Notes under the pieces: generated by a model
What the model was told of the DNA's origin: nothing
The model's database searches: none
The model's input: only the letters and a program-made list of their open reading frames with translations
Position numbers and translations under genes: made by a program
In this document: positions 2,180 to 55,000 of the stretch, piece after piece
Numbering within the stretch: position 1 is the stretch's first letter
Layout of the letters: each line of letters opens with the position of its first letter
DNA from: Bugula neritina
Lineage: Eukaryota; Animalia; Bryozoa
Direction of reading: 5' to 3'
Length of the DNA: 64,000 nt
NCBI GenBank assembly: GCA_964035545.1
Contig: OZ037769.1
Coordinates: 14,476,633-14,540,632, forward strand

Positions 2180-3745
<1,566 letters not shown>

Positions 3746-5514: not shown

Positions 5515-6061
5515 AAAAAAATACTTTGCATCTAATAGCTACAGATGCTACTATACGCTGTTAAATAACAGTCTTAAGTCTGAGCGAGCTTTTCCTTTTG
5601 CATGTACTTCTATAAAGAACAGCATTCCTACCTCTTTTCTAAAATGTCGGCTGTTTTTGTTTTGATAATCAACATCGGTGTAACTATAGCCTCTTTGACT
5701 TTGAATAAATCGAAAGCTGTATGAATGCTCACACTCAGAACTTTTTTTGTTCTTCTCCTACTTACAGCTCCAATCAATTACAATTGAAAAAGCTCCGCCA
5801 TGATTGACAATGTGTTGAAAGGTATACTTATTATTTTCCCCGGCTTTTTAGAGCTTCTTTTACAATATAGTCTACTTTTAAAAAAGGACGGGTTCCAGTT
5901 TTCTTATCACCTTTGTTTAAGCGTAAGTCATAATTGTTGAAGTTTACGCCTTTTAAACCCTTTGTAAACTAAAAAATCACTGAGGTGTTGATGCGTACGG
6001 TACAATAAAGTTACCAGTACTGTCTAATATTTCTTCAACTTCATCATCCGGGGTCGGTTCA

Positions 6062-6063
<2 letters not shown>
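5515..6063 (-). pseudogene. P2X-like pseudogene copy 2 (3' half)
   Basis: Near-identical to copy 1 without the MITE; same truncation point at (TA)n; frameshifts and a premature TAG in TM2. Confidence 0.88.
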
Positions 6064-7650
<1,587 letters not shown>

Positions 7651-11056: not shown

Positions 11057-12403
11057 CTAAGACTGTTGAGGTTTGGGGTCTGAAGTTTTAGTTTTGCAAC
11101 TAGAACAATAAGCTACTGCACATAAAACAATACTTTGAAATGTTCCAACACTTTTCAAAGCTAAGAATGCTGTTACGATTTTAAATAGCATATTCATGTA
11201 TGAGCGAGCTTTTCCTTTGGCATGCACTTCGATAAAGAACAACATTCCTACCTCTTTTCTAAAAAGTCGGCTGTTTTTGTTTTGATAATTGATATCAGTA
11301 TAACTATAGCCTCGCTGGCTTTGAAGAAATCAAAAGCTATAAGAGCGATCACACTTTAGGCCCGTTTTACTGTCTTCATACGTGCAGGTACAATTAATTA
11401 CAATAGAAAAAACTCCACCGCGTTTGACTATGTCTTTAAAAGTATGCTGATTATTTTCCCGTTTGCTTAGAGCTTTTTTCACGACATCTTCTACTTTAAA
11501 AAAAGAACACTTTTCAGTGTCATCATCACCTTTGTTTAGGCATACATTATAAGGGTTGAACTTAGGGCCTTTTAAGTCATTATTTTTAAACTGAAAAATT
11601 ACAGAGTTGTTGATATGTACAATAAAGTTACCAGTCCCATTTAATACTTCTTCAACTTCTTCATCTGGGTCAGGATCTGTATCAACTGGGCACCAGGCAT
11701 GCACGTAACAAGTCCCTCTGGCCACGTCACAAGTTCCGTTAGCATATCCGTCACTAAAATTTACCAACTTCAAGAACTCACAATCATCATCAGAAGTACA
11801 GTTTGGTTTCAAAGAAGAATGTTCATCTAAACATAGGCTTCTATTTTGCTCAACAGTTTTGATTAGTTTTGTCATCACAAAGAATTGGTCTGTAGCGTGT
11901 GCTGGTGTAACCACGTCATCTGCATCCCAAACTGTTATGTTTCCGGTTTTTGAATTATTTGCTTTTGCTGCTCCATAGACATTGATGGTTGTACTGCTCA
12001 CACCTACTGCCTCCTCGTAAAAAAATGACTCACTCCCAAAAAAGTAAACAAGTGACACAGCAAGTAATATAACGAACCAGACAATGTGCATGACAGCAGC
12101 ACACCAGCTATACTCTAACTTATCCTTAGCTTCTGAATATGGGATCTTAGGTTCGACTCGTTTAAGGGCTGCTTTGAGTTGTGCATCATTAAAAAATCTC
12201 ATTTCTGTTTCTCTGGCATCTTGGAGTGGTGCATCATTACTAGCTGTTGTTTTTTTTTCTTTGTCCTTCTTAAACGCAATATAACAATTTTCACAAATAT
12301 CGACAGCTTCTTTCACAAGTGATAAAAGAAAAGCTAAACCAGTTATTCCAGCACCAAACCATTCAGAGTGTTCTTCGGTCAGAAAGGGGATAATGTTTCC
12401 CAT
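11057..12403 (-). pseudogene. Full-length intronless P2X-like copy 3 with one in-frame TGA at 11330-11332
   Basis: ORFs 11330-12403 and 11057-11245 are in the same frame and the gap reads *FLQSQRGYSYTDINYQNKNSRLFRKEVG; the paralogue has CGA (Arg) at the stop. Confidence 0.88.
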
Positions 12404-14439: not shown

Positions 14440-17226
14440 TATATAATATTTGTAGCGTGAGTTTCTTAAGAAACAGCAGATGAAAAATTGCTCAAATTAT
14501 TATGCGTAGAATAATGGGCAATTATATTATTGAAGAAAAGAGCTCAATCAAGAAGAAGAACAGTTGCAAGTTGACAGCTTTCTCTATTGTATGGGAAATA
14601 AAAGTGAGAGTGTTTTCAATGGTTTAGCACTGTCGGATGAAGATATTAAGGACTACCAAAAAGTATCTGAAGCTTTTCAGAAGTATTTTTCTCCATGTAA
14701 GTACGTGATTTATGAACGAGCTCGTTTCTTCAGGCGCTGCCAACAACAAGGAGAAACTGTTGAACAGTATGTTAGGTCTCTAAATGACATAGCAGATAGG
14801 TGTGATTTTTCCAATAGATCAGAGCAAATGCGAGACAGAATTGTAGTAGGAATCACAGACACTAACTGCAGTCGTGAAACGCAGAAAATAAATGTTGAAG
14901 ACCTAACTGAAGAGGTTGCCATAAATATGGCTAGACAATTTGAGCAAGTAGACAAAAACGTTAAAGACTTAACAGAAAGTCATACTCAGGGTAGTACTAG
15001 TAATACTTCGGTAGATGCTGTCTCCAAATTCAGTAGTTATAGTAATAGTCACACAAACAAGTCTCAGAAGCACAGCTCTAAGAGTAACAGCACTAGGCAA
15101 ACTAATAACTCTACTCCATGTGGCCGATGTGGTTATGTAAACCACACAAGAGGTACATGCCCTGCTAAAGATTGTAAGTGTAAGCGCTGTGGTAAACTCA
15201 GACACTACACAAAAATGTGTAAATCTAAGCCTGCCAGTCAAGTTCAGCAAGTTGAAGAAGAAGTGGACAGCATATTTCTGGGTGAGATAGCTGAGAGTAA
15301 CGTAGGAGTGTGGACCAAGACTATTGTTGTATAGACAAGCTTGACTTTCCAGTTCAGTTCAAACTCGATACTGGTGCGAATGTCTCCATACTTCCTCAAA
15401 GGCTATGTTCTAATGTGCCATTAGTAAAGACTAAGAAGCAGTTTTTAGGCCCAGGTAACACTAAGATACCAGTTGTAGGCTGTTTTATTGCTAAACTTTC
15501 TGTAGACAATGTTACTCACACTGAAACTATTTATGTTGTCAACCAAACAAAAGCCTTGCTAAGTCGAAATGCATGAGTTAAGCTAGGGTTAATTTCATGT
15601 AAGTGTGATGTATACTCTGTTACTAATGTTACTGACAACTCTGTATTTTGTAGAGAATTCCCAAAATTTTTTAGTGGTCTAGGTAAAATGAATCATACCG
15701 TAGGTATAGAGTTGCGTTCTGAGTGTAAACCATTTGCTATTAACACCCCTCGTTCGGTCCTCTACCCCTTGTTGTCTAGTGTTAAGCAGGAGTTGAGTGA
15801 TATGGTTGCTAAAGGAGTAATTTCTCCAGTCAGTGAGCTCACAGATTGGTGTGCTCCCATGGTTGTAGTCCCCAAGGCTAATCGCAAGGTGAGAATCTGT
15901 GTTGATTACACTGAGTTGAACAAAGTTGTTCGTAGAGAAGTGCACCCCATGGCTCATGTTGAGTCAAGTCTCGCCAAGCTTGGCAATAGTAACTTTTTTT
16001 ACAGTACTCGATGCTAACTCAAGTTTCTATCAGATTCTTCTCTCTCTCAAAGCTAAAATGTTGACTACATTCTTGTTTCCTTTTGGTAGGTTTGCCTTTA
16101 ATCGTTTACCTTTTGGGTTGTTCTCTAGTCCAGAATTGTACTGCAAAATTGTTTCACAGGTTCTGGAAGGTTTGGATGGTGTTGTCTGTCACATGGATGA
16201 TGTTTGCATTTGGAGTAAATCTCAAGAAGAGCATGATAGTCGTGTTCGTGTTGTTTTGCGTAGGATGGTTGACGCTGGTATGACTCTGAATGTTGAAAAA
16301 TGTAAGTTCTCTCATAGCAGTATCAAGTTTCTTGGTCATGTCATATCCTCTTCTGGCATTCGTGCTAATCCCGAAGCAATCCAGGGTATAGAAAGTTTTG
16401 CCACTCCAACTTGTGTTAAGGATGTTTGCAGTTTCCTTGGAATGGCTAATCAGCTTAGCAAGTTCTCCACCAGGTTGGGTGAACTCAGTGCTCCCTTGCA
16501 TGAGCTTCTTCATAAAAACACTCCTTGGATTTGGGATGTTGCTCAAAAACAAGCCTTCTGTGACATCAAGAAAAAGTTACAACGTTGTGTTGAACTCGCT
16601 CCCTATAGTCCTCAGCGTGAAACAGTTATTCACACTGATGCTTCTCAATGTGGTATAGGTGCTGCTCTGTTCCAATATCAAGACAATGGCGAGCTATGCC
16701 TACTCTGTGCTGCTTCTCGTGGGCTCACTGAGACAGAGAAGAAGTATGCTACCATAGAGCAAGAAGTGTTGGCAGTTGTTTGGGCTTGTGAAAAGTTTAG
16801 GGATTATATTGTTGGTCTTAGAGTGGTTATCAAAACTGATCCCAAACCTTTAGTTCTACTCTTGAATGATATTGAGCTTGACAAGAACCATGCACCTATT
16901 CAGAGGTTTAGAATACGTCTCACGAGGTTCCAATATCAGGTGGAACACAATTCTGGAAAAAAGAATGTTATTGCAGATGCCCTTTCTCGTTCTGTAGGTC
17001 CCATTAGTGAGGCTGATGTTATGTTTATGGAAGAAGTAGAGCTTTTCGCTGTGTCAGCATTGCATAATACTGCCACTTTTCCTCGCTTGAAAGAGTTGAA
17101 AGTTCAACAAGAGAATGATGAGGTCTTATCTCGTGTTCTCCAATATGTTAGGTTTGGATGGCCCACATATTTGCCTTCTCATGAAATTTTGTTGCGCCCC
17201 TATTTTGAATGTACGTAGGTCTAGGC

Positions 17227-18921
17227 CAGGGGTGTCCAACCTTTTCAGACCGAGGGCCAGTCTGCAAGTTTCAGCTTGAGCTGGGGGCCACAACATTTTT
17301 TTTGTTTTTAGAATAAATTTTCAAGATTCATTAAACATCTGCAGGCCATATGCATTGTAATTATAAGCGAGGGCTAGGCTTTGCATGTTTATTAAAATCA
17401 TAACATATTTGAATAGATATATATTATTTATGTGTGTATGTGTGTATATATGCATTTAATTAAAATAGGTAAACAAGAAACATTTCATTTTTAAAACTTT
17501 AATAATCAATAATTATATATGCATTTATGTTTGTGCATAAGAAATTATACATATATATTTATACAAAGTATATATTCATGATTGTACATGCAAATTTAAA
17601 CAAGATGTGCCAGTGCTAAGAGTCTGTACTAATTCCGGTATAGTTGTATTTTACAACCATCAGTGAGACAGTTGTGAGTACACAGTGAGTACTGTTTGCC
17701 TTGAACAATTCTGTTAATATCTGGTTTCGTATCAGAACATATAACCCTTAGTTGCTGGACTAAGTGCTGACTAGTGAGTGAAGTGTAGTATTTATTTTGT
17801 GTATTTCATTTGACTGAAAATTGAAAGCTCAGAGTTCAAACCTTCAAGCCATCTCAGTGCAGTGCAGCATCTAACAAGCAGTCAAAGGTCAAAGGTCAAA
17901 TCATTTCAGTACATACTCGCACAAAATTCATTATAAAACAAAATTGTTTAGGCATCTAACCTTAAAACAGTATGTAAATGAAAACTAACATATACATAAT
18001 AATATTTTAGTACTGCATAAATGAAGTGTGTCAAGGATTCTTCAACTACTTATCTTTCACAATACAGTCAATAAAAGTGAGAGATCTCAGTTATAATTTC
18101 AAAAAAGTCTTGTCTCTATATGGCCTGTCCTGATTAAATGTCTTTGAAATACCTGTCTGCACAGGATAGTTACATGCAGGTAACTTTTTAGCTGCAACTG
18201 CCTTGCTGAGGTTTGCATTGTAACTGTGTAAAAATTCAGTACCAGTAAAAACAATCTTATTTAATTGAAGGCTACTAGAATCAAAATTTAAAAACTATGG
18301 TGTGAATCTTATTTTTTCTCAGTGCTGCTTTTTTGGAATTTTTTCATTTTTTTGCAAAGTTATAGAAAAAAACTGCACATTTTTGGCTAATTTTGCCTCA
18401 AAAGTTGATTTTAGTAGTACCAGTAAAATATCTTAGCAGGAAAACATGATATCTGAATAAAAAAGCAATGACTTTTAGATTTTATATAAATTGTGGATTT
18501 TACACGGGGAAATGGTATATTTCTTTTCAAGTAGTAAAAGCTGTGCATCACTTCACACTTCAGTGAACGCGTAGAGATGAGCATATAATATAGGCAGCTA
18601 CATTACTATAAGTCACAGGCTTGCTAGCTAACAGACTATAATGACTAGCTTACTGTTATTGGTTGTAGTTTGATCTCAGGCTAAACAATGACAAGTAGGC
18701 AACACGCATGCCACCCACAAGACAATATTGTAGAAGAACTTAAACTACATTTTAATAGAAATTCTTAGTGGGATGCTTTCAACTATACCATGTGCTGCTG
18801 TTTCAGGCTAGTTAGCAAATTTGATGAACAAAAATTTGTAACTTGCTATACCTTTGGGGGGCCACACAAATATAGCTGGAGGGCCGGATCCGGCCCGCGG
18901 GCCGCCTGTTGGACAGCCCTG
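17227..18921. mobile_element. Non-autonomous hAT element inserted in the Mag-like pol
   Basis: TIR CAGGGGTGTCCAAC / GTTGGACAGCCCTG; perfect 8-bp TSD GTCTAGGC. Confidence 0.93.
18160..18794. mobile_element. CACAG-terminated (CACTA/EnSpm-like) MITE nested in the hAT
   Basis: Same family as 55825-56578 (CACAGGATAGTTA...; shared internal sequence); CTG on both flanks. Confidence 0.8.
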
Positions 18922-20158
18922 GTCTAGGCTCTCTACGATTGAAGATATTTTAGTTCTTGACAGTCGCATTGTTATTCCCCATGCCAAACGTCTAGCCGTG
19001 CTTGACAAAATTCACAGTGGTCACCTTGGCATCACCAAATGTAGGTCTCGAGCTGCACAGTCAGTCTGGTGACCCAATATGTCCCAGCAAATTGCGGAGA
19101 TGGTTAAAAAGTGTGAGTCCTGTAGGAAAGAGTCAAACGTTCAGCAATCTCCACTCCTTCGTTCTGAGTTTCCTAGTCGTCCTTGGGAAAAACTAAGCAG
19201 TGATTTGTTTTATATTGACAGTAAGTGGTTCTTGCTAGTAGTCGATTACTATTCTCGTTATATTGAAGTTGCATTGTTGGAGGATCTCACCAGTTCTAAG
19301 GTTATACTCCATTTGAAGAGCATATTTGCTCAACATGGTGTCCCAGAGGTCCTGATTTCTGATAATGGTGTGCAATATGCTTCAGAGGAATTTAAATCCT
19401 TCGCCCGAAAGTTTGGTTTTACCCATGTTACCAATTCTCCTAAACACCCTCAAAGAAATGGTGCATCTGAACGAGCCGTTCAGACTGTTAAAAACATTTT
19501 GAAGAAAGGACAAGATCCGTATTTAGGGTTGATGGCTTATAGGTCTTCACCGTTGGAAAATGGTGTCTCTCCAGCTGAGTTGTTGATGGGTCGGAAACTG
19601 CGCACTACAGTGCCTTCTTTGCCATCAGTGTTGGCCCCAAAGCAGCCCGATGTAGAACGGGTTAAGCAAAAAGAGGCTCATGCTAGAGCTCAGAGCAAAG
19701 ATACATTTGACTTGAGACATCAAGTTGTGGTCCCTCCATCGTTAAGTCCTGGTGATAGAGTTCACATGCGTGATCTGAATCGTGATGCTGAAGTTGTTAG
19801 TACTTCCCCTGCAAGGCCCCGATCAGTTGTTGTTAAAAGTACTAATGGTGTCCCACTCAGACGCAATGTTACCAACCTAGTGCCATTACAAATTACTGAG
19901 TTGTCTGATGACAATAATGTCGCTAAAGAATCTAGTTTTGGTAGAACTATTAAACCTAGACAAGATTTGGATTTGTAAATATACTATTTGCTGTGTTTGT
20001 TTTCATTTTATTATGTATTGCATTACCATTGTGTTTGTTTTCACCAGAGTGCTAAAATGTCTCTGTGTACTATCAATATGTTTCCAATGTGTGTTTTCTG
20101 CTGTATTACAATTTTGTGCAGTCTCCCCATCTTTTATTATTGTCTTGAGAAAGGGAGG

Positions 20159-31918: not shown

Positions 31919-33331
31919 TTAAGGCATAAGCGGGGTGGCTGACTGCAGTTGTGGGCTCTCGCAGGTTTGGGCTTTGGATCTTTTACAACTTTCACGAATT
32001 TTACAACAGCAGCAAAAACAACAAGCTATAAAACTTACAAGAACACTTTGCAATGTTCCAACGCTTCTAATAAATACAAATGCTACTACGGTTTTAACCA
32101 GCAGCCTTGTGCTAGAGAAAGCTTCTCCTTTTGCATCCACTTCTATAAAGAACAGCATTCCAACTTCCTTTCTAAAATGTCGGCTGTTTCTGTTTTGATA
32201 ATCAACATCTGTGTAACTATAGCCTCGTTGGCCTTGAAGAAATCGAAACTTGTATGGATGCTTACACTTAGGTTTATCTGCATCCTTCTCATACTTGCAC
32301 CTCCAATCAATTACAATTGAAAAAACTCCACCATGATTGACAATGTGTTGAAAAGTATACTGACTATTTTTCTGATATTTTAGAGCTTCTTTTACAATAT
32401 AGTCTACTCGAAAAAAAGGACACTTTTCAGTTTTTTTATCACCTTTGTTTAGGCATACATCATAATGGTTGAGGACTGGGCCTTTTAAACCATTGTTTGG
32501 AAACTGAAAAATTACAGAGGTGTTGATATGTACAATAAAGTTACCAGTCCCATTTAATACTTCTTCAACTTCATCTGGGGTAGGTTCGGTATCAACTGGG
32601 CACCATGCATTCACGTAACAAGTTCCTTTGGTCACGTCACAAGTTCCGTTAGCATATCCGTCACTATAATCTACCAACTTTAAGAACTCACAATCATCAT
32701 CAGAAGTACATTTTGGTTTGAAAGAAGAACGTTCATCTGAACATAGGCTTCTATTTTGTGTAACAGTTTTAATCAGTTTTGTCATCACAAAGAACTGGTC
32801 TGTAGCGTGTGCTGGTGTAACAACGTCATCTGCATCCCAAACTGTAAGTTTTTTAGTGTGAGGATTAACTGCTTTGGCTGCTCCGTAGACATTGATGATT
32901 GTACTGCTCACACCTACAGCTTCCTCATACCAAAATGTCTGACTTAAACATAAATATGCCACTGACACACGAAATGCTACAACAAGCACTACAACGTGCA
33001 TAATGCAAGCTTTCCAACTGTTCTTAAACTTTTCTTTAGCCTTTAAATATTTGTCCTCCTCAAATTCATGGAGCTGAGTGGTTGCGGCTGCTGTTTGCCC
33101 ATCTTTTACAGAAGTTGGTTTTTTCTCTCTTGCAGAATTTGGTTTTCCCTCTCCTTCAACAGAAGTTAGTTCTGTCTTTTGTGCAGTTACAGACCTTTCC
33201 TTATTTTTGCTCTGAACACCGGTACGCCAGTTCTCCCAAACATCACAGAGCTCTTTGATTATTGACAAAAAAATAGTTATAAGTGTCAAACCAAATCCAA
33301 ACCATTCAGATTCTTTGTCTCCCAGAATCAT
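31919..33331 (-). CDS. Intronless divergent P2X-receptor-like ion channel (intact, 470 aa)
   Basis: TM1 and TM2 plus P2X ectodomain motifs VWD..D.V.P, FFVMT, C.SD.DC, G.C..TC...WCPV, NF, CPFF, GG...I.I.W.C, C.P.Y.F, GY, R..K..G; 10 conserved-pattern Cys. Confidence 0.92.
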   Translation of the reverse strand: MILGDKESEWFGFGLTLITIFLSIIKELCDVWENWRTGVQSKNKERSVTAQKTELTSVEGEGKPNSAREKKPTSVKDGQTAAATTQLHEFEEDKYLKAKEKFKNSWKACIMHVVVLVVAFRVSVAYLCLSQTFWYEEAVGVSSTIINVYGAAKAVNPHTKKLTVWDADDVVTPAHATDQFFVMTKLIKTVTQNRSLCSDERSSFKPKCTSDDDCEFLKLVDYSDGYANGTCDVTKGTCYVNAWCPVDTEPTPDEVEEVLNGTGNFIVHINTSVIFQFPNNGLKGPVLNHYDVCLNKGDKKTEKCPFFRVDYIVKEALKYQKNSQYTFQHIVNHGGVFSIVIDWRCKYEKDADKPKCKHPYKFRFLQGQRGYSYTDVDYQNRNSRHFRKEVGMLFFIEVDAKGEAFSSTRLLVKTVVAFVFIRSVGTLQSVLVSFIACCFCCCCKIRESCKRSKAQTCESPQLQSATPLMP

Positions 33332-33374
33332 GTTGATGATTGTGAGTGTTTTACTATGACAGTTTTTTAAAAGT

Positions 33375-33575
33375 GGAAAATATATAGCTGAACGTTGATT
33401 TTATATCTTGATTATTAGTCTCTCATCAAAATCTTCCTTCATGAAGTGACATGATTGGTCAAATGATGTTTATTTGTTATTGGCTACCAACTAGCTAATA
33501 AAACTATGCAAACACACACACATGTGGGCGCGCACACACACACACGCACGCACGCACGCACGCACGCACGCACAC
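33375..33575 (-). promoter_or_regulatory. Putative proximal promoter of the intact P2X-like gene
   Basis: TATATA ~50 bp upstream of ATG, two CCAAT boxes (ATTGG on plus), then a CA/CGCA repeat; conserved with 12465-12625. Confidence 0.5.
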
Positions 33576-34073
33576 ATGCATTTGTTGTTTCTTTCTCTTT
33601 CACAATCGTCAAAATACTGAAATTTTTATAACGGAAAAACTTGCCCATTGTGGTTTGGTAGCGGGTACAATCGGCCACTGCATGGTTGGAACGCACCAAA
33701 TATATTAAAACTTTGCTTATTTGGTTGTACCTCACTTTTATTTATTTGATGTACACAAATAAACGAAAATACTCTTTTATATCTACAGAAAAATCATGTT
33801 TTAGCTGCACGGTTTGCGCCACCACAGATAGTAGGGGAGGCAAAACAAAACGCACATCACTTATTTCTATGGTGCTATTGTCATTAATGTTTAGAACTAA
33901 AAGTTTTTTTTAGTTTTGAGCAAAATTCCCACTTCACAAGAACTTTCACCAGAAAAAACTTTAGTAACATATTATGTACTACAAAATTCCGCGTGGACTT
34001 TTTCCTCTTACTATAGAAATAAATCTAGAGCATAAACATTAGAAGAAATAAAATGAGATTTGATTAATATAAT

Positions 34074-36863: not shown

Positions 36864-37787
36864 ATGGGGGACGAAGAAGAAGAAGTCGTGGTAGAAGGAG
36901 AAGAAGAAGTAGAAGGGGACCGTCTCACCATGGAGACGCTCATCACGGCTCTCCGAGAGGTCGGAAAGACCGGACAGGCAGCACCTGGAGACAGGTATCG
37001 CCTGAGGCCTCCGATTTTCGGAGGCGAGGGCGATATCGAACAATTCATCAGAGAGTTTGAGGAGGTAGCCACCCTGGCCGAATGGCCGGCACCGGTGCGC
37101 CTCCTCCACCTCCGTACCTGTCTGACGGGTCAGGCAAAGAGTTATGCTCTGGGACCCAATACAGCGCACATCTTTCAGGCCCTCAGGTCGCGTTTCGGGC
37201 TAACCGCCCGCGCCGCCAGGGACAGATTGCGCACCATACGCCGAGACCGGAAGACCTCACTCCAAGACCATGCAAACGCTATTGAGGCACTAGTACCAGT
37301 AGCCCATAGCGACGACACACCGGCAGCACAAAGAGGTGCTGTGTATGAAGCCTTCTTCCACACAATCAATAACCCTGGACTACAGCGTTATTACTTGGCA
37401 GCCAAGGTCACCACTATAGAGGAAGCCTTAACCCTGGGCAAGGCTTACTACCAAGTGGAGGGACCTCAGTGTGCGGATTTCACCGCTTGTCAAATTGAGG
37501 AACGACCCGAAGTCGCTAAATCGGATCAGCCAAACCCACAGGCCATGGCGGCTGCTACTACTTCGTCACCCGACCAGATGACCATGCTGATGGACATGGT
37601 AAAGGGATTGCAGGCAGAGATGAAACAGATGCAGAGAGAACAGGCTGATAAACGAAACCCCCGACCCCGGGGTGAACCAGCCGGTACTACCCACCTCACC
37701 TGCTGGGGGTGTGGTGCCAGGGGACATGTACGAAGACAATGCCCTCACGAAAGAAGGATGCCTTTAAACACCCGGGGCTCGCGGTAA
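36864..37787 (+). CDS. gag: Gag (Gypsy B)
   Basis: 307 aa; capsid-like region plus CWGCGARGHVRRQC. Confidence 0.93.
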   Translation: MGDEEEEVVVEGEEEVEGDRLTMETLITALREVGKTGQAAPGDRYRLRPPIFGGEGDIEQFIREFEEVATLAEWPAPVRLLHLRTCLTGQAKSYALGPNTAHIFQALRSRFGLTARAARDRLRTIRRDRKTSLQDHANAIEALVPVAHSDDTPAAQRGAVYEAFFHTINNPGLQRYYLAAKVTTIEEALTLGKAYYQVEGPQCADFTACQIEERPEVAKSDQPNPQAMAAATTSSPDQMTMLMDMVKGLQAEMKQMQREQADKRNPRPRGEPAGTTHLTCWGCGARGHVRRQCPHERRMPLNTRGSR

Positions 37788-37806
37788 CCTCCGCCAACCG
37801 TGAACC
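37763..37806 (+). promoter_or_regulatory. -1 programmed ribosomal frameshift signal
   Basis: T TTA AAC in the gag frame, followed by hairpin ggctcgcggt/accgtgaacc; pol is in the -1 frame. Confidence 0.75.
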
Positions 37807-39919
37807 ACCAGCCAACCCCATCCGGGAAGAAATGATCCAAGGAGCCTCTTCCAGGCCAGCCGAGGCTGCGTGGAGACGTCGGAGACCCCAAGGTCTGCCC
37901 GACTCTCTGACCCAGCCACCTACGACCCAGATGGGACCCCTAGATGCAGGATGGCAGGCACCTCGGAGATCTCGGAGACCGCAAGGTTTACCCGATCCTC
38001 CGGCCTGGCCACTCCAAAACCGGTTCGCGGGGTTGCCCGAAGAGGCTGTGGAGGAAGATTCAGCTTATTCGCAAGAGTATCCAAAGCTACCCTTCCAGCC
38101 TCAGAAAACCCCCGTTGTCTGTAAGACGAAGAGGAGGCCCGCTGTAAGGACCCAAGAGGTGTCCCCCCCAGAGACTGACCGACCCAGGAGCACCCAGCCG
38201 TATGGAAGCAGCTACTTCCTACCCGGAAAAATTTCGGGTAAAGCTGCCACCTTCCTGCTGGACACAGGGTGCACTACAAACCTGCTAAGTCGGCGTCTCT
38301 TCGACACCCTTGGTGCCCGAGAGCGGGCGAGCCTCGAGCCATACGAGGGAGCACACGGTACGTTGGCGGACGGATCGTGTATTCCCTTCTATGGCATTAT
38401 CACGTTACCTGGACGAGTCCGTGATAAAGTGATTCAAGAGACGTTCATTGTCAGCCACCTGAAGGAAGACGCCATTCTGGGAATGCCCTTTCTGGAGAAA
38501 CACCAGTGTCACATGGATTTCCAGAAGTCGGCGGTGGTGATGGCTGGGAAGGAACTTGCCTGTGTGGACAAGTTTGGTAGGCCCTTGGTGGGCGGAGTCC
38601 AGGTAGTGCAGGACTGCACGATTCCAGGGAGATCCCAGGCTACTCTCCGATGCAGGGTCAACTGCAAGGAGATCGCCGCACTGGGGGTGGTGGAGGGAAC
38701 GCACGGAGCAATCCGACTAGCAAACAGCCTAAATCGGCTGGACTGTCGAAGAGAGCTCCTCGTGCAATGCATCAACCCCTTTGCGGAATCGGTCCGATTA
38801 TCGGCTGGTGTACTGGTGGGGAAGTACCACTCCATCCATGAGGCGGATGTAGGTCCGGCACTGGAAACAGTGACCGACACCCAGGGAAACCCCCCTCACA
38901 ACCACCGAGAAGCAGTCCCGGAGCATGTGGCTGGCTTGTACAGTGGAGCGTGTGGGAACTGTACGAGTAGTACTGAACGCCAAACACTGGCTCAACTACT
39001 CGCGGAGTACAGTGATGTCTTCAGTCGTGGTGATGAAGATATGGGACTGACTAAGGTTATCTCCCACGAGATACCCCTGGCAGCTGGCACCACTCCCATC
39101 AGGCAGCCAACCCGACGTCTGGGCCCGGAGAAGGAGAAGGAGGTGAGCCGGCAGGTGCAAGATCTTCTCGACCGGGACCTGATTGAGCCTGCCCACGGTG
39201 CGTGGAGCTCTCCAGTAGTCCTGGTCAAGAAGAAGGATGGTAGCTGGAGGTTCTGTGTGGACTACCGCAGACTCAACAGCGTTACCATCCAGGACGCTTA
39301 CCCCCTCCCGCGGATAGATGAGTCTCTGGATGCCCTCGCGGGTAGCAAGTACTTCAGTACTCTGGACCTGCTTAGCGGGTACTGGCAAGTACCCCTCAGT
39401 CCTGATGCTCAGGACAAAGCAGCATTCATTACCCGCGATGGGCTCTGGAAGTGGAAAGTACTGCCGTTTGGACTTACGTCCGCCCCGGCAACTTTCCAAA
39501 GACTCATGGAGCAGGTCCTCAGTGGGTTACACTGGAAGACCCTCCTAATCTATCTGGATGACGTCATTGTCATCTCCCCAAACTTTACGACTCATGTCAG
39601 TCGTCTGCGGGAGGTCTTTGACCGACTCCGGGCTGCTGGACTGAAGTTGAAGCCCTCCAAGTGTGCACTCCTACAGCAAGAAGTCACGTACCTGGGCCAT
39701 GTGGTTGGCCGTGACGGGGTCGCTACCGACCCAGAGAAGGTACAGGCTGTGAAGGAGTGGGCCGTCCCCCGGGACCTCTCTGAATTGCGGGCATTCTTGG
39801 GCCTGGTAGGGTACTACAGGCAGTACGTACCGGGGTTTGCAGGGGTGGCTCAGCCTTTGAATCGGCTAACCACCAAGGAAGCACCCCCCACTCTAGCACA
39901 CAGGAAACACCGAACTTGA
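37763..39919 (+). CDS. pol: Pol (protease and RT), truncated by internal deletion at ~39878
   Basis: FLLDTGC, WRFCVDYRRLN, LPFGL, YLDD; runs out of frame after PLNRLTTK. Confidence 0.9.
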   Translation, partial: FKHPGLAVTSANREPPANPIREEMIQGASSRPAEAAWRRRRPQGLPDSLTQPPTTQMGPLDAGWQAPRRSRRPQGLPDPPAWPLQNRFAGLPEEAVEEDSAYSQEYPKLPFQPQKTPVVCKTKRRPAVRTQEVSPPETDRPRSTQPYGSSYFLPGKISGKAATFLLDTGCTTNLLSRRLFDTLGARERASLEPYEGAHGTLADGSCIPFYGIITLPGRVRDKVIQETFIVSHLKEDAILGMPFLEKHQCHMDFQKSAVVMAGKELACVDKFGRPLVGGVQVVQDCTIPGRSQATLRCRVNCKEIAALGVVEGTHGAIRLANSLNRLDCRRELLVQCINPFAESVRLSAGVLVGKYHSIHEADVGPALETVTDTQGNPPHNHREAVPEHVAGLYSGACGNCTSSTERQTLAQLLAEYSDVFSRGDEDMGLTKVISHEIPLAAGTTPIRQPTRRLGPEKEKEVSRQVQDLLDRDLIEPAHGAWSSPVVLVKKKDGSWRFCVDYRRLNSVTIQDAYPLPRIDESLDALAGSKYFSTLDLLSGYWQVPLSPDAQDKAAFITRDGLWKWKVLPFGLTSAPATFQRLMEQVLSGLHWKTLLIYLDDVIVISPNFTTHVSRLREVFDRLRAAGLKLKPSKCALLQQEVTYLGHVVGRDGVATDPEKVQAVKEWAVPRDLSELRAFLGLVGYYRQYVPGFAGVAQPLNRLTTKEAPPTLAHRKHRT

Positions 39920-40950
39920 TGATGTTGGGCCGAGAAACCAGGGTACCAGAACATCTCGCGTACCACATTCCTAACCCAGAATTCCCAGTACATGAGTACG
40001 TGGGAAAGTTAGTCGAAACCATGAAGAAAGCTCATGACGCACTGAGAGAGAAACAGTGGCTGGTACGAACAGAAGATTCCGAGGAACCACCTCTGTATCG
40101 CGAAGGGGACTGGGTGTGGATGGTCAGCTACCGCAGGCGACGCGGACAATCGGCTAAATTACAGCCTAAGTTCGTCGGGCCCTACTGCGTGGTAGAGGTT
40201 TTACCAAACCATACATATCGTGTGGAACGCTCGGGACAGATATCTGTTCAAAACGAGCAGCGGTTGAAACCTTACCACGGAAGCCCGGAAGCCGCGGGAC
40301 AGGCACCACCACTGCTGGAACCAGCACGACAGCCCATCACCCGTGGGAGGAGGAATCAACCCCGAGAGTGGGAAATAATAGTTCGTGACCCCAGGGAAGT
40401 CCAAGACACCTCCGACGCCCCCCCACGGAGCCTGCCACCCGCTCTACACACCCATGATTTACCCACCCAGACCAGCCAACCAGAGACACCCACCTCGCTA
40501 ACACCGGCCCCAGAGGACCTCCCCTTGCCACCGACGCCTGTCCCAGACGATATTCCACCTCCACCAGACACCCCACATCAACCAAGCAACCCTACCAACC
40601 TCACGCTAGGGAGAGGGAAAAGAGACAAGAAACCACCGGGTTATTTAGCTGATTATCACGTGGGATGCATGGCTGAACTTCACCCTTCAAATCATTACCC
40701 CCAACCAGACTCGAATTCAAACTGTCACCTCAGAACAACCATAAATACACTGACTACCCAAGAAAATCGGGACCGAAATTCGGAGGCGGCCCGACACCCG
40801 GAGTTGTCTAATTTAATTGACCACTTGACCAGTCACGTGATCGGCGATCGCACGAGTTTTAAAATTAAAAATCAAAACTCGGCCATTTGCACTTCAACTT
40901 TGAACAATACAGCACGCTATTTTAAATTCAATTTGAAAAATTTGACAGAT
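39916..40950 (+). pseudogene. Integrase C-terminal remnant (GPY/F motif, Pro-rich tail)
   Basis: MMLGRETRVP, KLQPKFVGPYCV, RDKKPPGYLADY. Confidence 0.85.
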
Positions 40951-42165
40951 ATGGAGCCTGTGACAGTTAATCAGACCCAGCTCGCTACGATATCAGGTAT
41001 TTCTAGCTTACTAGAACCTCCATTCACGGAGTGTAGTAGCTCTCTAGACTCATTTTCACCCGACTATCAGTGGGAAAATGAGCTGTTCTTTGATCACAAA
41101 GGTCAGGACGATGTAGAAGAGTCCCCAGTCCACGACTACCTGCTAGACCAGGAGGTTGGACGGGTGTCTCTTCGGCTATCACCTGACCTACCCATGTGTC
41201 AAAGAGTGCCTTACAAGGAGATGCCGAAATTCGGCACTCCTACGGCCAGGTCACCAAGCTCTCTGTTTTCTATTGCAGAAGCCATGGAATGTGAGGAGGT
41301 CGGGTCGAGTCGTATCGACTCCCCGGCCACCACAGTTCCCGACCCGGCTGTTACCAGCCCGCCTGAGGTTCCAGCACCAGAGCCTACGCTCACCACCCAG
41401 CCGGAAGCAGGTACCCCCCCTCCAGCCGACGGTTCCCCGTCCGGTGAGGGCCCTCAGTTGAAGGACGAGCCTCCTTACCAACAGCTAGCTCTCCCCCACA
41501 TCTTGACAGAGCGCCTCCACTGGACCACGGCAGAGACCCGTGCTAGGATAGAGCAGGACTGCGGAGAGGCCGGCAACCGCAAGTGCCGCCAGTGTAGTAA
41601 GAGATTTACTACTACCAGGCGACTGCGGGTGCACGTGCCCCAACATTATGCCAACGTCTTCTGCCCGTGTGGCGAATTCTCTTTTCAGAGAGATTATGTG
41701 CTGAGGCACCAGCGCATAGCCCGCTGCCACACGGGTCAGGTGTTTGTTGTCGACGAGGCGACATTTCCCGAATTTTGAGACTTGATTCTCCCTCACATCG
41801 GCGACCCCCATAAACGGGCAACACTCGCCCAGGGATTTCCGGCATGCCGCCCAACGCAGGATGCTACCGACGACGAGGCACCACCCGCGGCCCAGCCAGC
41901 TGTCACCCGACCTCTCCGGGTTGTGTTGGCTAGGGTCGACGGGAATGGAGAGAGAACCCAGCAGATAGCCGGCCACAAGAGGCGGAGGCGCCAGGACCCT
42001 AGGACCCAGGGTTCCACCCCTACCCCAGCAGTGCCAGCACGATGCCCCCATGAGACAGAGGTTCTCCGGCTGCGCCGGCAGGTACGCCGGCTGGAAGACG
42101 ACCTCCACGCTGTTCGCCGCCGCCTGGACAGGCTCGAGGGCCGCAGAGGTGACCGTCGCAACTGA
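40951..42165 (+). CDS. Accessory ORF3: acidic/Pro-rich region, two C2H2-type zinc fingers, basic patch, coiled coil (one internal TGA at 41776-41778)
   Basis: CRQC-x12-HVPQH and CPC-x12-HQRIARCH at 41584-41730; ORF 41782-42165 continues in the same frame; EVLRLRRQVRRLEDDLHAVRRRLDRLE. Confidence 0.72.
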
Positions 42166-45876: not shown

Positions 45877-48800
45877 TTAATAATTTTCATGAGGAGGGTT
45901 GAAATTCGTTGTAATGTTCATAGATTTAAGTTTGCTGTCAGTCACATAAGTTGTTAGAAGACTCGCAGCACCAATGAAATTGGTACCTTGGTCCGATTGA
46001 ATCGTCTGAATTGGACCTCCAATGGCTACCACAGTCCTGACAGCATTTATGATGCTGTCAGTAGTCATGTCCTCTAAAAGTTCAATATGAACAGCTCGTG
46101 AGGCCATGCATGTGACTATCAAGTCATATCGTTTTGATTCTTTTCTACCATCTTTGTCAATAAAAGGGCCAAAACAATCTAATCCACAGTGGGTAAAAAG
46201 AGGGGCTTCATTGACTCTCGCTGATAGTAATTTTGCCATTTGTGGTGTCAATGTTTGAGCTTTGATTCTTTTACATGTTACACAAAAGCATAACTTTGAT
46301 GAAATTGTGGATTTACCACCGATGATCCAAAATCTCTGTAATATTATTTTAGCCAGAATATACTGTAAGCCAAGGTGTCCCAGTTTTGCATGAGCGTCAT
46401 TTCTGATAAGCGTAGTGAGATGACTGTGCGTAAGTCAGAGTAACGGATGTTTTTCTTCAAATAATAGCAATTTACTGTTTTGTAGCCTTCCTTCCACCCT
46501 GAGCAGACCCACCTTATCTAGAAATGGGCATAGTTTTGCAATGGAGTTATGCTTGGATGTAGTCTGAGTTTGTTGGAGTTGCTTGATTTCTGGAATGAAG
46601 ATTTTTGATTGAACTGACTTGACTAGAGAGTGTAACGTTTGTTGGCGTTTCTCTTGCTGAGTGAGAGAGGTTTTGCATAGTGCTGCTTGGATTCTAGCAA
46701 TAACTTTAAGAGTGTAATATAGGTCAGAGAAAATTGTTAGACACCGACTAAGAGGGACAAAGGTGTGTTGAGTGGCTAATGAAACTTTCACTTCTTGGTC
46801 GTCATGTGAGTTGGTGAACTTTTTCTGATGAAGGAGTATGATAGGTTCATTCCACAAGAAGTCTGGTCCTGTGAACCAAATGCACTCAGGAGAGAAAAGT
46901 TGCTTTGGTGATAACCCACGCGATGCATGATCTGCAGGGTTGAGCTTAGTTGGGACATAAAAGCAGTTGTCAGCATTGAAGCTATAACAGATTTGCTGAA
47001 CTCGATTTGCAACAAATGTGTGATATCTAGCCTGTGTATTCTTTATATAACCAAGAACGACTTATGAGTCAGTATAAAAATACTGAGCTACATGATCTAT
47101 ACCTAGCTCTTCTGCTGCCTTGAGGCTTAGATTTGCAGCCCACGTGCTGTTTGGAGCTCCAATCTGGGAACAGAAATAGCTTTGAGCGTAATGACATGAC
47201 CTTTGCTACAGATTAAAGCAATATGCACACGTTTGGCTGAGTTTACAATTGCAAGTAGGAGCAATGACCGTAGGCCATTGTACTGGCATTGCTAAAGGTA
47301 TGTAGCTCAACTTCAGCAGGTGTTCCAAATAATGATGGTACAAAGCTTTTAGAAATTGATAGGTGTTTAGGATCTTTGAGGCTTTGTTCTCATGACAACC
47401 AGTTTGCCAGCATGCTTTCATCTAAAGGATCATCCCAGTCCATTTTTTTGCAAAGATCTTTGAAAAAAATTTTACCTTGCAGTATAACCGGTGATGTGAG
47501 GCCAAGTAAATCAAAGACTGTGGTAACATTTGAGAGCACGCCTCGTTTAGTGTTGCGTTTATCAACAAGATTCACCTGGAACTAGAAGGAATTTTGCTCA
47601 GAATTTTACATCAATCCCAAAGTTCTTTCAATTGGAAGACGGTCAGAGTTTAGGTCAAGATCATGCAGGGTTGCAGATTGTTCAGATTTGGGGAATGAAT
47701 TTAATATTTCTTTTTTGCTAGAAAGAATCTTCTGCTGGTGTACTTTACCTTGTTGGCAAATTCCCCTTGTCTCGGTAAGTACTTTGGTTGCAGATGTTGC
47801 ATCAGGCATACTGCATGAGCAAGTCATCATCTGCATAGAACTGATTTCTAATAAATTTTCGGGGCTTGTTGACTTGATGGATCATTTGTGCTGTACTGGT
47901 CAGCCAGATAACGTAGATCATATGTTACACATGCAAGAGGCGAGGTCGCTTCAAACACATGCACTTTCATACGGAATACTGTTATTTCACTCAGTTCGTC
48001 TAGTCAGAAAAATCGGAGATAATCTGTATCTTCCTCTGCAACACGAAATTGGTGAAACATTTGCTCAATATCACATGTAACAGCAATCTGTTCTTGATGG
48101 AAGCAAAGAAGAATACCAGTGAGACTGTTTAGATGATCTGGACCTGTCATGAGATAGTCGTTTATGCTTTTTTCATCTGACTTTGCAGCACTATCAAAAA
48201 CTACTCTAATCTTGCCTGGCTTCTTTGGATGCCATACCTCGAAATGTGGTATGTACCATGTGCTGTCCCCATGGCTTGCTATGTCTTGTGGAACTATTTC
48301 AGCCTCACCCTTGCTAATGAGGTTTTCCATGAACTCTTTGTACTGGTTTTCCAAGTTTTGGTTCATAGATAACTTTTTCAGTAGTGAGTTGAACCGGTTT
48401 TTGATGTTTTAAAACTGTTATTTTGTGGTAGTTTGTGTTTGAAAGGTAAAGGCATAGCCTAGGGCCACACTGTGCGTATTTTCGCATGCGAAAATTGAAA
48501 TCACAAGTAGCAAAGGTGTCCACTGTGCGCGTTGAGAAAACATTCGCACTTGTCGCTCAGCATTTTCAACGCAAGTGCGAATCGTCTCTGTCATCGTCAC
48601 CTAATTGGCTGATAGTTATTCAGCGAGCCCAATTTCTTCATTTTAGTGCTACATTCCAGTAAATTGCATTTTATTGAAAGCGAGCGCGATTTAAAAATGA
48701 AAGCTTTATTTATCACGCATCACTGACGCTACAGTGGACACCTTTGCTACTTGCGATTTCAATTTTCGCATGCGAAAATATGCACCGTGTGGCCCTAGGC

Positions 48801-51212: not shown

Positions 51213-52085
51213 ATGGCCGACGAGAACGACGCGCCCAGACAGGGACCGGCAGCAGTAGAGGAGGATCACATAGGCGGCCCAGCGCTGCCTATGGACAGGT
51301 ACCACTTGCGGGCTCCCATCTTCTCAGGGGAAGAAGATGTGGAGCAATTCATCACTGAGTTTAGTGATGTGGCGGACATCTGCGGATGGCCGAATAGGGT
51401 TACTCTGATCCAGCTGCGGTTATGTCTGACAGGGCCGGCTAAACCCTATGGGATAAGCTAGAATGTCGGTGACATATTTGAAGCACTATGAGCTCGGTTT
51501 GGATTAACAGCTCGAGATGCTCACGTGCAACTGCAGAGTCTTAGGAGAAATCCTAAGACCAACCTGCGAGAGCATGCTACCGCAGTCGAACAACTGGCGC
51601 AAGTCGCCTACAGCGACTTGCCTGCCGATAGTCGACAGAGCCTAGCACTGGATGCATTCCTCCAGTCTATTAACAACCTCGGTCTGAAACAGCATCTGCT
51701 GGTGGCCGAAGTTGAGACTATGGAGAGAGCTCTAAGGCTTGGGAATGCCTATTTCCAAGCTGAGAGTGCGAGTCGACCTGGTGCGACGATACAGCAGGTC
51801 GGAGCAGACGACGACGTGTTGACGTCGCCGGCGAAGACAGCTGTACATGTCGCCTCGGCAGCAGCAGACGAATCGACTAGCTTGACCACAAGCTTGATTC
51901 GAGAACTGCTGGCCGAGATCAGGCAACTACGCCACCAGTCGACAGCCGAGCGACCCAGGAGGTCGTCGGTAGCTGTCGACGACAGGCGCCGCCCGTATGC
52001 TGGGGCTGTGGTAGTGGTGGGCACTTCATACGAAGTTGCCCCCGCGGTAATGGGAGACAGTTAAACAGCAACGGCCCACGGTAAC
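51213..52085 (+). pseudogene. gag: gag of Gypsy C (stops and frameshift)
   Basis: RYHLRAPIFSGEEDVEQF; split into ORFs 51213-51461 and 51525-52064. Confidence 0.88.
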
Positions 52086-55000
52086 TTCCGCCGACCGTGG
52101 GCCCCAGTTTCGCCCCCCAAGGCAGAGGCCAAGGCCCAAACCCCACCGGGTGAAAAGGCCGCTTTCGCCAGAGTGGCAAGCCCCAAGGAGAGTTAGCAGG
52201 CCGCAAGGCTCACCAAAACCTCCGGCTTGGGCACTCAAAAACCGCTTTGAAGGTTTGCTTGATGAGGGAGTGAACGACGAGTGGGAGCAAAACAGGGATT
52301 TTCCTCGGTTGCCCACACGAGCATCAGTCCGAGAATTCACTCGGCCGCCCGTGTGTCAGCGAGACCGGGACGTAACCTGCCTGCCCACGCAACGTCGACG
52401 ACCCCCTCGCAACCGAAAAGCACAGGTGCATCCCCAACTCCATGCACATGAGGTGTCGCTTCAAGAGACGAACCGCTCAGTGAGCGCTCAGCCATATGGA
52501 AGCAGCTATTTCCTCCCCGGCAAACTTGCTGGCAAAGCTGTCACATTCCTATTGGATACTGGGTGCACCACAAATCTACTGAGTCGACGTCTATTTGACA
52601 CTCTCAGTGCCAGGGACAGGGCTAGCCTAGAGTCATATGAAGGGGAACACGGCACGTTGGCGGACGGGTCGTGTATTCCTTTCTATGGGGTAATCCAGTT
52701 GACTGGTAGAGTCCGTGATCAGACGATCAGTGAGACCTTCATCGTCAGTCAACTCAAGGAGGACGCCATCTTGGGCATGCCATTTCTGAAGCGACACAGG
52801 TGCTACATCGACTTTAGCAAGTCGGCGGTATTGATGGCCGGGCGTGAGCTGGCCTGTGTCGACCGATTTGGCCGACCCTTAGTGGGGGGAGTGCAGGTGG
52901 TACAGCGTTGCACTGTACCTAGGCGCTCCCGGGCTACAGTTCGCTGCAGAGTGAACTGTAGGGAAATCTCCGAGTTAGGAGTGGTGGAAGGTGCACTGGG
53001 GGGCGTCCAGCTCGCTAACAGTCTGAATAGGCTGGATGAGTGGGGGGAGTTCCTAGTCCAGTGCGTAAACCCTTTCACGGAGCCGGTAGAATTGCCGGCT
53101 GGGTCTCTAGTGGGGAAGTTTCACTCCGTACAGGAGGAGGATGTAGAGCCCGCGCTGGAGACGGCGGACGAAGCCCGTGGGGTACCCACTAGAGACGGCA
53201 GGGGGCCGGTGCCTGAACACGTAGCGGAGTTGTACGAGGATGCCTGTGATGGCTGTGAGAGCAAGCGGGAACGCCTGGTGATGGCGCGGCTACTCTCTGA
53301 GTACAAGGACGTGTTTAGTTGCGGCGACCATGACATGGGTCTGACTAAGACTGTCTGTCATGAGATACCCCTGGCGGCGGGGACGGCGCCCATTCGGCAG
53401 CCGACCCGCCGGTTAGGTCCTGAGAAGGAGAGAGAAGTGAGCCGTCAGGTGCAAGACCTTCTGAACCGGGACCTGATTGAGCCAGGCCATGGGGCCTGGA
53501 GTTCTCCAGTCGTCCTGGTTCGGAAAAAGGATGGTAGCTGGAGGTTTTGCGTTGACTATCGCAGGCTGAACAGCGTGACCATCCAGGACGCTTACCCTCT
53601 CCCTAGGATCGATGAGTCGCTCGATGCCTTAGCTGGTAGCAAGTTTTTCAGCACGTTGGACTTGCTAAGCGGGTATTGGCAGGTGCCCCTGAGTCCTGAA
53701 GCACAGGACAAGGCTGCGTTTATAAAGCGGGATGTGCTCTGGAAATGGAAGGTGTTGCTATTCGGACTTACGTCCGCACTGGCCACCTTCCAGCGACTCA
53801 TGGAGCAGGTCCTGAGTGGGCTGCACTGGAAGACCTTGCTCATCTATCTCGATGATGTCATTGTCATCGCCTCCGACTTCGACACACATGTCAGTCGACT
53901 CAGGGAGGTGTTTGACAGGCTTCGAGCTGCGGGTTTGAAGCTCAAGCCCTCTGAGTGTGCATTATTGCAACGCGAGGTTAAGTACCTGCGCCATGTAGTT
54001 GGTCGAGACGGGGTCGCCACCGACCCCGAGAAGGTACGGGCTGTGAGGGACTGGGCTGTCCCTGTCGATCTCCCTGAATTGCGGGCATTCCTGGGACTGG
54101 TAGGGTACTATCGTCAGTACATACCAGACTTCGCCGGAATTGCACAGCCGTTAAATCGGCTGACAGCGAAAGGGGTGCGATGGCAGTGGACGCAGGCCGA
54201 GCAGAAGGTATTTGACCACCTGAAGGATCGCCTGGTGGAAACACCCAACTTGGCGTATCCTGACCCTGCGAAGGAGTACATTTTAGATACTGATGCCAGT
54301 AATCATAATGTGGGGGCTGTGCTATCGCAGGTCCAAGATGGTCGCGAGGTGGTGATGGCTTACTATAGCAAGGCCCTGCCGGCACCTGAGAAGAACTACT
54401 GTTCGACCAGGAGGGAACTCTTGGCAGTAGTCAAGGCGGTCAAACACTTTAGACCATATCTATATGGGCGCACATTCCGTCTGCGGACGGATCATGCGTC
54501 TTTGATATAGCTGTGTCGACGGGCGGAACCATCAAGCCAAGTAGTGCGCTGGCTAGAGATCCTGGCAGAGTTTTCTTATCGGATCGAACATCGACCCGGT
54601 AAGAAACACGGTAATGCCGATGGACTCAGCCGCCGCCAGGCAGATGGGTGTAAGCAGTGCCAGAATATTGAGCGCAGGGACGGTGGACCCCCTCGCTTGG
54701 ACGTTGAAGCGCAGTTGGGGAAAGCGGGTGTATACAGCTGGGAAGAAGGGCAACTCCTGTCCGAATCTCCTAACGAAGCTGTTAACAACCTTCACGCAAA
54801 CCCCACGTTGCTCAGGAACGTCAGGGAGCTATGTCGGCTCCAGACTACGCTATTAGGGGTGGTAGCTGACCTAGTCCGGGCCAAGAAGGAGGAACGGCAA
54901 CCGAGTGAGGCCGAACAGCGAGTGAAAAGTGCAGAGTTTAAGTACTTCTGTGACCGCTGGGACTCCCTCAGGTTCAACAGCGATGGGCTGCTAACGATTA

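What the first reader, a model, noticed from the sequence alone, without database searches (positions are those of the whole stretch)
31919..33331. Intronless P2X-fold channel that has lost most of the ATP-binding site: candidate new receptor class
Seen: the P2X cysteine scaffold and two TMs are intact, but most canonical ATP-contacting motifs are replaced. SSVxTKxKG reads SSTIINVYG (both Lys lost), NFTxxIKN reads NFIVHINT (Thr and Lys lost) and GYNFR reads GYSYT. Only the Lys of RTLxK remains (RHFRK). The same substitutions occur in the diverged paralogue at 11057-12403, so they are a family trait and not decay of one copy. Known: these residues coordinate ATP in vertebrate P2X receptors, and animal P2X genes are usually multi-exon. 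Inference: a retrocopy-derived, locally expanded P2X family repurposed for another ligand or gating mode (e.g. chemosensory), analogous to cephalopod chemotactile receptors arising from nicotinic receptors.
Basis: partly seen in the sequence, partly recalled or inferred. Interest (0 to 1): 0.88.

Follow-up and report, generated by a model that had tools for sequence, protein, structure and literature searches.

The report
Bryozoan P2X channels lacking ATP site
This intact gene of a colonial marine animal (a bryozoan) belongs to an apparently undescribed branch of the ATP-gated P2X ion channels that has replaced most of its ATP-binding residues, rebuilt its pore helix and gained an extra hydrophobic N-terminal helix, so it probably opens to something other than ATP, but nobody has tested it.

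Summary
Confirmed: an intact 470-aa ORF with the P2X fold and all 10 ectodomain cysteines. Of seven ATP-pocket positions (zebrafish P2X4 K70, K72, T189, K193, N296, R298, K316) only K316 survives. It is one of four full-length paralogues in a Bugula-like bryozoan genome.

The gene belongs to a 19-sequence clade (SH-aLRT 99-100) that includes Watersipora proteins auto-named 'P2X4-like' and groups with ordinary bryozoan P2X. One or two extra N-terminal hydrophobic helices replace the YxTxK motif (19/19). TM2 has Lys/Arg at the rat P2X2 Gly342 position (17/19; 0/82 canonical) and has lost Asp349.

The ectodomain is under purifying selection (dN/dS 0.13-0.52). 'Intronless retrocopy' is not distinctive: five other P2X genes here, four with intact ATP sites, are intronless too, and the paralogues share upstream non-coding DNA.

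Best reading: a non-ATP-gated, possibly anion-leaning channel (0.45). Caveat: Dictyostelium P2XE lacks both key lysines yet is ATP-gated. Chemosensation is unsupported and expression unproven. The scan noted two sister paralogues before (s1-457283).

The parts
31919..33331 (-). Gene A: intact single-exon CDS, 470 aa, divergent P2X subunit
33248..33304 (-). Extra N-terminal hydrophobic helix (candidate TM0, residues 10-28), acidic on its N-side, with a family-conserved Glu27 at its end
   Evidence: KD19 1.77; helical in AF2, pLDDT 76-80; KD19 >=1.05 in 19/19 clade members vs 3 of 56 testable canonical P2X; flanking charges
33017..33247 (-). Variable charged linker (residues 29-105); the canonical YxTxK cap motif is absent
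   Evidence: pLDDT below 50 at residues 59-79
32945..33016 (-). TM1 (residues 106-129)
32114..32944 (-). Ectodomain with 10 Cys. Pocket positions: N147 (32891-32893), Y149, I266, N270, S372, T374 (32210-32212); K388 retained (32168-32170); clade-specific K185
   Evidence: dN/dS 0.52, CI 0.33-0.90, p 0.007 against its orthologue
32024..32113 (-). TM2 (residues 407-436) with R422 (32066-32068) at the rat P2X2 G342 / human P2X4 G347 position, S429 for D349 and K413 for N333
32003..32023 (-). Cys cluster after TM2 (C437-C443), possible palmitoylation anchor; YxxxK trafficking motif absent
   Evidence: the palmitoylation role is inference
33370..33580 (-). Upstream non-coding block shared by all paralogues and orthologues (CCAAT-like boxes), bounded by a GT-rich microsatellite; likely promoter / 5' UTR
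   Evidence: the promoter role is inference
11057..12403 (-). Gene D: full-length paralogue (60% identity) with an in-frame TGA at codon 358 (11330-11332); its orthologue P0003 is intact
5528..6065 (-). Decayed 3' half of a paralogue (stops, frameshifts), cut at a TA microsatellite
3040..3518 (-). Second decayed 3' half, cut at the identical junction

Best explanation
The gene encodes a functional subunit of a bryozoan-lineage P2X subfamily that arose by duplication of an ordinary bryozoan P2X. SHOWN: P2X fold, intact reading frame, purifying selection on the ectodomain, loss of 3 of the 4 phosphate-binding basic residues and of the adenine-reading Thr, conserved polar/aromatic replacements, a basic residue in TM2, loss of the TM2 Asp and of both cap motifs, and an extra hydrophobic N-terminal helix. 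INFERRED: it assembles as a trimer like other P2X. The inter-subunit cleft no longer binds a triphosphate with useful affinity and instead binds a smaller or less charged ligand, or senses ions or pH, through the same cleft-to-pore coupling. Three TM2 Lys/Arg and no Asp ring bias the pore towards anions or low Ca2+ permeability. TM0 (N-terminus out, or a hairpin in members with two extra helices) anchors the N-terminus in place of the cytoplasmic cap.
For: Pocket: 17/19 clade members keep only one of four basic residues, against 78/82 canonical-type proteins with all four (the canonical set was selected on these sites). The replacements are conserved across proteins only 23-28% identical: Asn at K70 in 18/19, Tyr/Phe/His at K72 in 16/19, Thr/Ser at R298 in 17/19. 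K69A or K69C alone makes rat P2X2 ATP-insensitive, a chemically modified K69C channel opens to zinc or acid, and T339K raises anion permeability (PMC4460280). TM2 Lys/Arg is in 17/19 vs 0/82, and the Asp is absent in 19/19; the register is confirmed against human P2X4. Ectodomain dN/dS is 0.13, 0.49 and 0.52 for three orthologue pairs. Clade support is 99-100, and it groups with bryozoan canonical P2X at 95-96.
Against: There are no functional or expression data. Dictyostelium P2XB lacks one and P2XE both key lysines, yet both are ATP-gated, EC50 about 270-510 uM (PMC2787382, PMC3853471). Gene A is the least constrained of the two intact pairs tested (residues 98-436 dN/dS 0.71, CI 0.46-1.13), and its TM segments have dN/dS near or above 1 with wide intervals. 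A charge in mid-TM2 could also prevent a working pore. No trimer model was available, so compensating basic residues (K185, K188) could not be placed. TM0 hydrophobicity is marginal in some members (KD19 1.1-1.3).
Confidence: 0.45

Rival explanations
1. Still ATP-gated, but at low (high-micromolar to millimolar) affinity through a different set of contacts (K388, R384, new K185/K188), perhaps in an intracellular compartment.
For: K316 and R312 equivalents are kept in 18/19 and 19/19 members. Dictyostelium P2XE is ATP-gated without both lysines. Clade-specific lysines were gained in the upper body.
Against: Dictyostelium receptors lie on the other deep P2X branch (PMC10620158), whereas this clade descends from a canonical-site ancestor and replaced six of seven positions, on both faces of the cleft. 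The same genome keeps at least four 7/7 P2X genes for ATP sensing.
Confidence: 0.2
2. A silent modulatory subunit that co-assembles with canonical P2X, removes binding sites and changes selectivity or acts as a dominant negative.
For: Dictyostelium P2XC and P2XD give no currents and suppress P2XB. Trimer-building ectodomain strands are the most conserved part. Both faces of the ATP cleft are disabled, as a damper would be.
Against: The conserved new pocket residues and pore lysine suggest a positive function of their own. 23-28% identity to canonical subunits and loss of the domain-swapped cap motifs make hetero-assembly less likely.
Confidence: 0.17
3. A non-conducting receptor or scaffold that uses the P2X ectodomain for binding and signals through its N-terminal linker and Cys-rich tail.
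For: TM2 has lost the Gly-Ser-Gly and Asp features, carries one or two mid-helix lysines and is weakly hydrophobic; TM segments evolve faster than the ectodomain.
Against: The TM2 lysine is conserved in register over 23-28% identity, which suits a pore function. No signalling domain is present.
Confidence: 0.1
4. Decaying duplicates.
For: One paralogue has a stop codon and two fragments are decayed. Gene A dN/dS is 0.90 over the whole alignment. No RNA run holds this exact gene.
Against: Open frames with 10 Cys persist across Bugula, Watersipora and other samples. Ectodomain dN/dS is significantly below 1 (p 0.007 to 3e-11). Upstream DNA is conserved. The broken copies fit ordinary birth and death of duplicates.
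Confidence: 0.08

Closest known systems
Vertebrate P2X1-7 (closest solved: human P2X4 9bqh, tick P2X 5f1c)
   Same: Fold, 10 ectodomain Cys, TM1/TM2 layout, R312 and K316 equivalents; about 22-26% identity.
   Different: K70, K72, T189, K193, N296 and R298 replaced; YxTxK and YxxxK motifs lost; TM2 Gly>Lys/Arg and Asp lost; extra N-terminal hydrophobic helix; single-exon CDS.
Canonical bryozoan P2X of the same genome (L008, L010, L012, L013; L007 with a partly eroded site)
   Same: Nearest relatives in the tree (SH-aLRT 95-96); also intronless.
   Different: They keep 7/7 pocket residues (L007 4/7), YxTxK and a short N-terminus.
Watersipora subatra XP_067940410 / XP_067940412 ('P2X purinoceptor 4-like', automatic names)
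   Same: Same clade: N at K70, T at R298, K in TM2, extra N-terminal helix; XP_067940410 is intronless.
   Different: Only 24-25% identical to gene A; keeps T189, K193 and N296 (3/7).
Dictyostelium P2XB-E
   Same: P2X proteins missing canonical ATP lysines; P2XA and P2XB are chloride-permeable; P2XC and P2XD are unresponsive and dominant negative (PMC2787382).
   Different: Belong to the other deep P2X branch, which has no bilaterian members (PMC10620158); P2XB and P2XE remain ATP-gated; they sit on the contractile vacuole.
Cephalopod chemotactile receptors
   Same: Lineage-specific ligand-gated-channel offshoot that lost its canonical agonist site.
   Different: Different superfamily (pentameric), larger expansions with sensory-tissue expression; here 3 intact copies, a conserved pocket and no expression data.

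Membership tests
P2X receptor family (Pfam PF00864) | Profile match above the curated cut-off and P2X fold | tested here: met
   148.8 bits vs cut-off 27; Foldseek E 1.6e-25, probability 1.0
P2X receptor family (Pfam PF00864) | Ten ectodomain cysteines | tested here: met
   C197, 208, 214, 231, 238, 244, 293, 304, 345, 356
P2X receptor family (Pfam PF00864) | Exactly two TM helices with both termini cytosolic | tested here: inconclusive
   TM1 and TM2 are present, but so is a third hydrophobic helix at residues 10-28; topology is not established
Canonical ATP-gated P2X | Phosphate-binding K70, K72, N296, R298, K316 and adenine-reading T189 (PMC8199792) | tested here: not met
   Only K316 is kept
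Canonical ATP-gated P2X | N-terminal YxTxK/R motif and C-terminal YxxxK motif | tested here: not met
   Both absent; a strict YxxxK is also missing in some canonical genes of this genome
Canonical ATP-gated P2X | TM2 Gly342 and Asp349 (rat P2X2) of the cation pore | tested here: not met
   R422 and S429
Canonical ATP-gated P2X | Trimer and ATP-evoked cation current | not testable with these tools
   Needs expression and electrophysiology; only monomer models could be made
Recent processed retrocopy | Lacks the introns of a close parent and shares no upstream DNA with it | tested here: not met
   No close intron-bearing parent (best non-clade match about 30% identity); five other P2X genes are intronless; paralogues share upstream non-coding DNA. 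An ancient retroposition at the base of bryozoan P2X is not excluded (one search is unresolved).
Chemosensory receptor repertoire | Large expansion with a diversifying ligand pocket | tested here: not met
   4 full-length copies, 3 intact; pocket positions near-invariant among paralogues; ectodomain dN/dS 0.26-0.39 between paralogues
Chemosensory receptor repertoire | Expression in sensory cells | not testable with these tools
   No RNA run on record for this organism

The most novel reading that the evidence does not exclude
A natural animal P2X-fold channel with three or four membrane helices per subunit that is gated by a non-nucleotide signal (a small metabolite, an ion or pH) and conducts anions, i.e. 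an inhibitory or sensory receptor class built on the P2X scaffold and used by bryozoans.
Probability: 0.22. Interest if true: 0.87.

Novelty: new variant of a known kind. Interest (0 to 1): 0.63.

Why it matters
In the reviews I read, every functionally characterised animal P2X channel is ATP-gated, and agonist recognition is described as highly conserved across species (PMC8199792). A natural, selected clade that changed the agonist pocket, the pore and the N-terminal architecture together would show that the scaffold can be re-wired, as has happened in the Cys-loop, glutamate-receptor and DEG/ENaC families (own knowledge). Single-exon genes from two bryozoan genera, with ATP-site-intact paralogues as built-in controls, make the question directly testable. 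Database names ('P2X4-like') hide the divergence.

Tried and rejected
- Word-index homologue searches found only the Bugula-like proteins; the wider clade came from the full HMMER scan.
- The metagenome locus scan found nothing, and A2 was too divergent to use as its query.
- The ESM Atlas gave only ordinary P2X clusters and no hit for residues 1-105.
- Literature searches found no description of bryozoan or ATP-site-less bilaterian P2X. The library is incomplete, so this is not proof of novelty.
- Expression could not be shown. The one possible RNA run holds only relatives under 95% identity, as contigs, and its RNA status is a guess.
- A cleavable signal peptide for the N-terminal helix was rejected by reasoning: it would invert TM1 and put the disulphide-rich ectodomain in the cytosol.
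- Careful trees did not finish in time; supports are SH-aLRT from quick searches.
- No trimer or pocket coordinates were available, so the check for compensating basic residues was not done.
- The source organisms of the biofilm-metagenome and Logan members could not be named.

Full report
OBSERVATION. The minus-strand ORF 31919-33331 is open for 470 codons. It matches Pfam P2X_receptor at 148.8 bits, and all 34 distinct PDB sequence hits are P2X proteins. An AlphaFold model (pLDDT 82.9) retrieves only P2X structures among its 50 listed hits. Mapping onto canonical columns gives N147, Y149, I266, N270, S372, T374 and K388 for zebrafish P2X4 K70, K72, T189, K193, N296, R298 and K316. A family-profile alignment to human P2X4 gives the same register. 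K70, K72, N296, R298, K316 and T189 are the residues named as ATP contacts in the IUPHAR review (PMC8199792).

GENOME CONTEXT. The genome is 216 Mb in 321 contigs. It holds seven canonical-type P2X loci and four full-length divergent ones: gene A, the window paralogue D, and two more about 155 kb beyond the window. Gene D has an in-frame TGA at codon 358, where the paralogues read Arg; its orthologue in another sample is intact. Two decayed 3' halves lie at 3040-3518 and 5528-6065. Five of the seven canonical-type genes are single open frames, four of them with all seven pocket residues, so lack of introns does not mark this gene out. All paralogues and orthologues share about 130 nt of upstream non-coding sequence next to a GT-rich repeat. 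This indicates duplication of genomic DNA, not separate retroposition.

ORGANISM. The only close homologues are JGI proteins on contigs labelled AY690838, which is the accession of the Bugula neritina mitogenome. They pair one to one with genes A, C and D at dS 0.17-0.18, with 84-90% DNA identity including flanks. I infer a member of the Bugula neritina complex or a close relative. An earlier agent also read this genome as bryozoan.

WIDER FAMILY. A full HMMER scan returned further proteins at 23-28% identity with the same pattern. They include Watersipora subatra XP_067940410/412 (XP_067940410 is intronless) and proteins from marine biofilm and other metagenomes, whose hosts are unnamed. Nineteen sequences form one clade (SH-aLRT 99-100) that groups with canonical bryozoan P2X (95-96) (quick trees, long branches). 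Seventeen of 19 keep only one of the four basic residues. The replacements are themselves conserved: Asn at K70 in 18/19, an aromatic residue at K72 in 16/19, Thr/Ser at R298 in 17/19. That pattern looks like a rebuilt pocket, not a free one.

First, every member has a hydrophobic segment before TM1 (KD19 at least 1.05 in 19/19, against 3 of 56 testable canonical proteins) and lacks the YxTxK motif. In the Bugula-like genes it is one segment with an acidic N-flank, which fits an N-out anchor. Four members (P0005, P0008, P0009, P0010) have two segments, and the model of P0009 shows helix 6-29, a short turn and helix 34-70, which fits a hairpin. Whether these span the membrane is inferred, not shown; some are marginal. 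Second, TM2 carries Lys/Arg at the rat P2X2 Gly342 position in 17/19 (0/82 canonical), has lost Asp349 in 19/19, and in many members has a second basic or acidic residue three positions on. [quoted passage not shown] The TM2 Asp contributes to calcium permeability (PMC3853471).

SELECTION. Nei-Gojobori estimates for the ectodomain against orthologues are 0.52 for gene A (CI 0.33-0.90, p 0.007), 0.13 for gene C (p 3e-11) and 0.49 for gene D. Between paralogues they are 0.26-0.39. Gene A is less constrained overall (residues 98-436: 0.71, CI 0.46-1.13). Its membrane segments are near or above 1 with intervals too wide to call positive selection. The family is functional, and gene A may be relaxed or diverging. 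Expression is not shown: no listed run is on record as RNA, and the candidate holds only relatives.

MECHANISM. Most likely (0.45) this is a trimeric channel in which the inter-subunit cleft responds to something other than ATP and the pore leans to anions or low calcium. In rat P2X2, loss of the first lysine alone abolishes ATP gating, and a chemically modified version then opens to zinc or acid, so the gating machinery can work without ATP. The main caution is Dictyostelium: P2XE lacks both key lysines yet is ATP-gated, while P2XC and P2XD are silent and dominant negative (PMC2787382). These give rivals 1 (0.20) and 2 (0.17). A non-conducting receptor (0.10) and decay (0.08) are less likely. 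The chemosensory analogy lacks support: three intact copies, near-identical pockets, and a conserved rather than diversifying ectodomain.

COMPARISON AND NOVELTY. It is a P2X-family protein by fold and descent, but it fails the tested sequence criteria for a canonical ATP-gated P2X. I found no paper on this clade (incomplete library). The Clytia survey places lysine-deficient receptors on a branch without bilaterians (PMC10620158). Site erosion is not unique to this clade: L007 in this genome, a Folsomia 'P2X5' and several unnamed proteins also lack pocket residues. What is distinctive is the joint, conserved change of pocket, pore and N-terminus.

VERDICT. Observation confirmed; interpretation partly supported; new variant of a known kind; interest 0.63. 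Nothing was taken for human sequence. Spliced models were not joined, and gene D was read through with X at its stop in scripts. One notebook entry gives Asn at K70 as 16/19; the correct count is 18/19.

Noticed in passing
window 3040-3518 and 5528-6065 (-): Both decayed P2X halves begin at the same base, directly after a TA microsatellite, so one truncated copy was duplicated. Upstream of the 5528-6065 half lies an ORF (6472-6879) that resembles a GIY-YIG/Penelope-type endonuclease by eye; it has no Pfam hit.
   Followed up: partly
L007 (G000:C5:7698645-7699697): An intronless P2X with a partly eroded ATP site (K70>S, K72>T, R298>Y) but normal N-terminus and TM2; it pairs with P0011 in the trees. 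It may be a second, independent departure from ATP gating in bryozoans.
   Followed up: partly
   Followed up: no
proteins P0089, P0094, P0110, P0134, P0147: Other long-branch P2X proteins lack most ATP residues, one from the springtail Folsomia candida. P0110 also has Lys at the TM2 Gly342 position without an extra N-terminal helix, possibly convergent.
   Followed up: partly
window 36864-42165 and 51525-55884 (+): Two related Gypsy-type LTR retrotransposons (protease, RT; RNase H in the second); further retroelement pieces at 14564-19978 and 45877-48366.
   Followed up: partly
run X2 laid on window 32100-32850: Up to 8 divergent contigs stack on the conserved ectodomain, consistent with alleles of 4-6 copies; extra copies missing from the assembly are not excluded.
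   Followed up: no
P0014; gene A residues 437-443: Cys-rich C-terminal tails are common in the clade (a very long Cys/Lys repeat in P0014), reminiscent of the palmitoylated C-cys anchor of P2X7.
   Followed up: no
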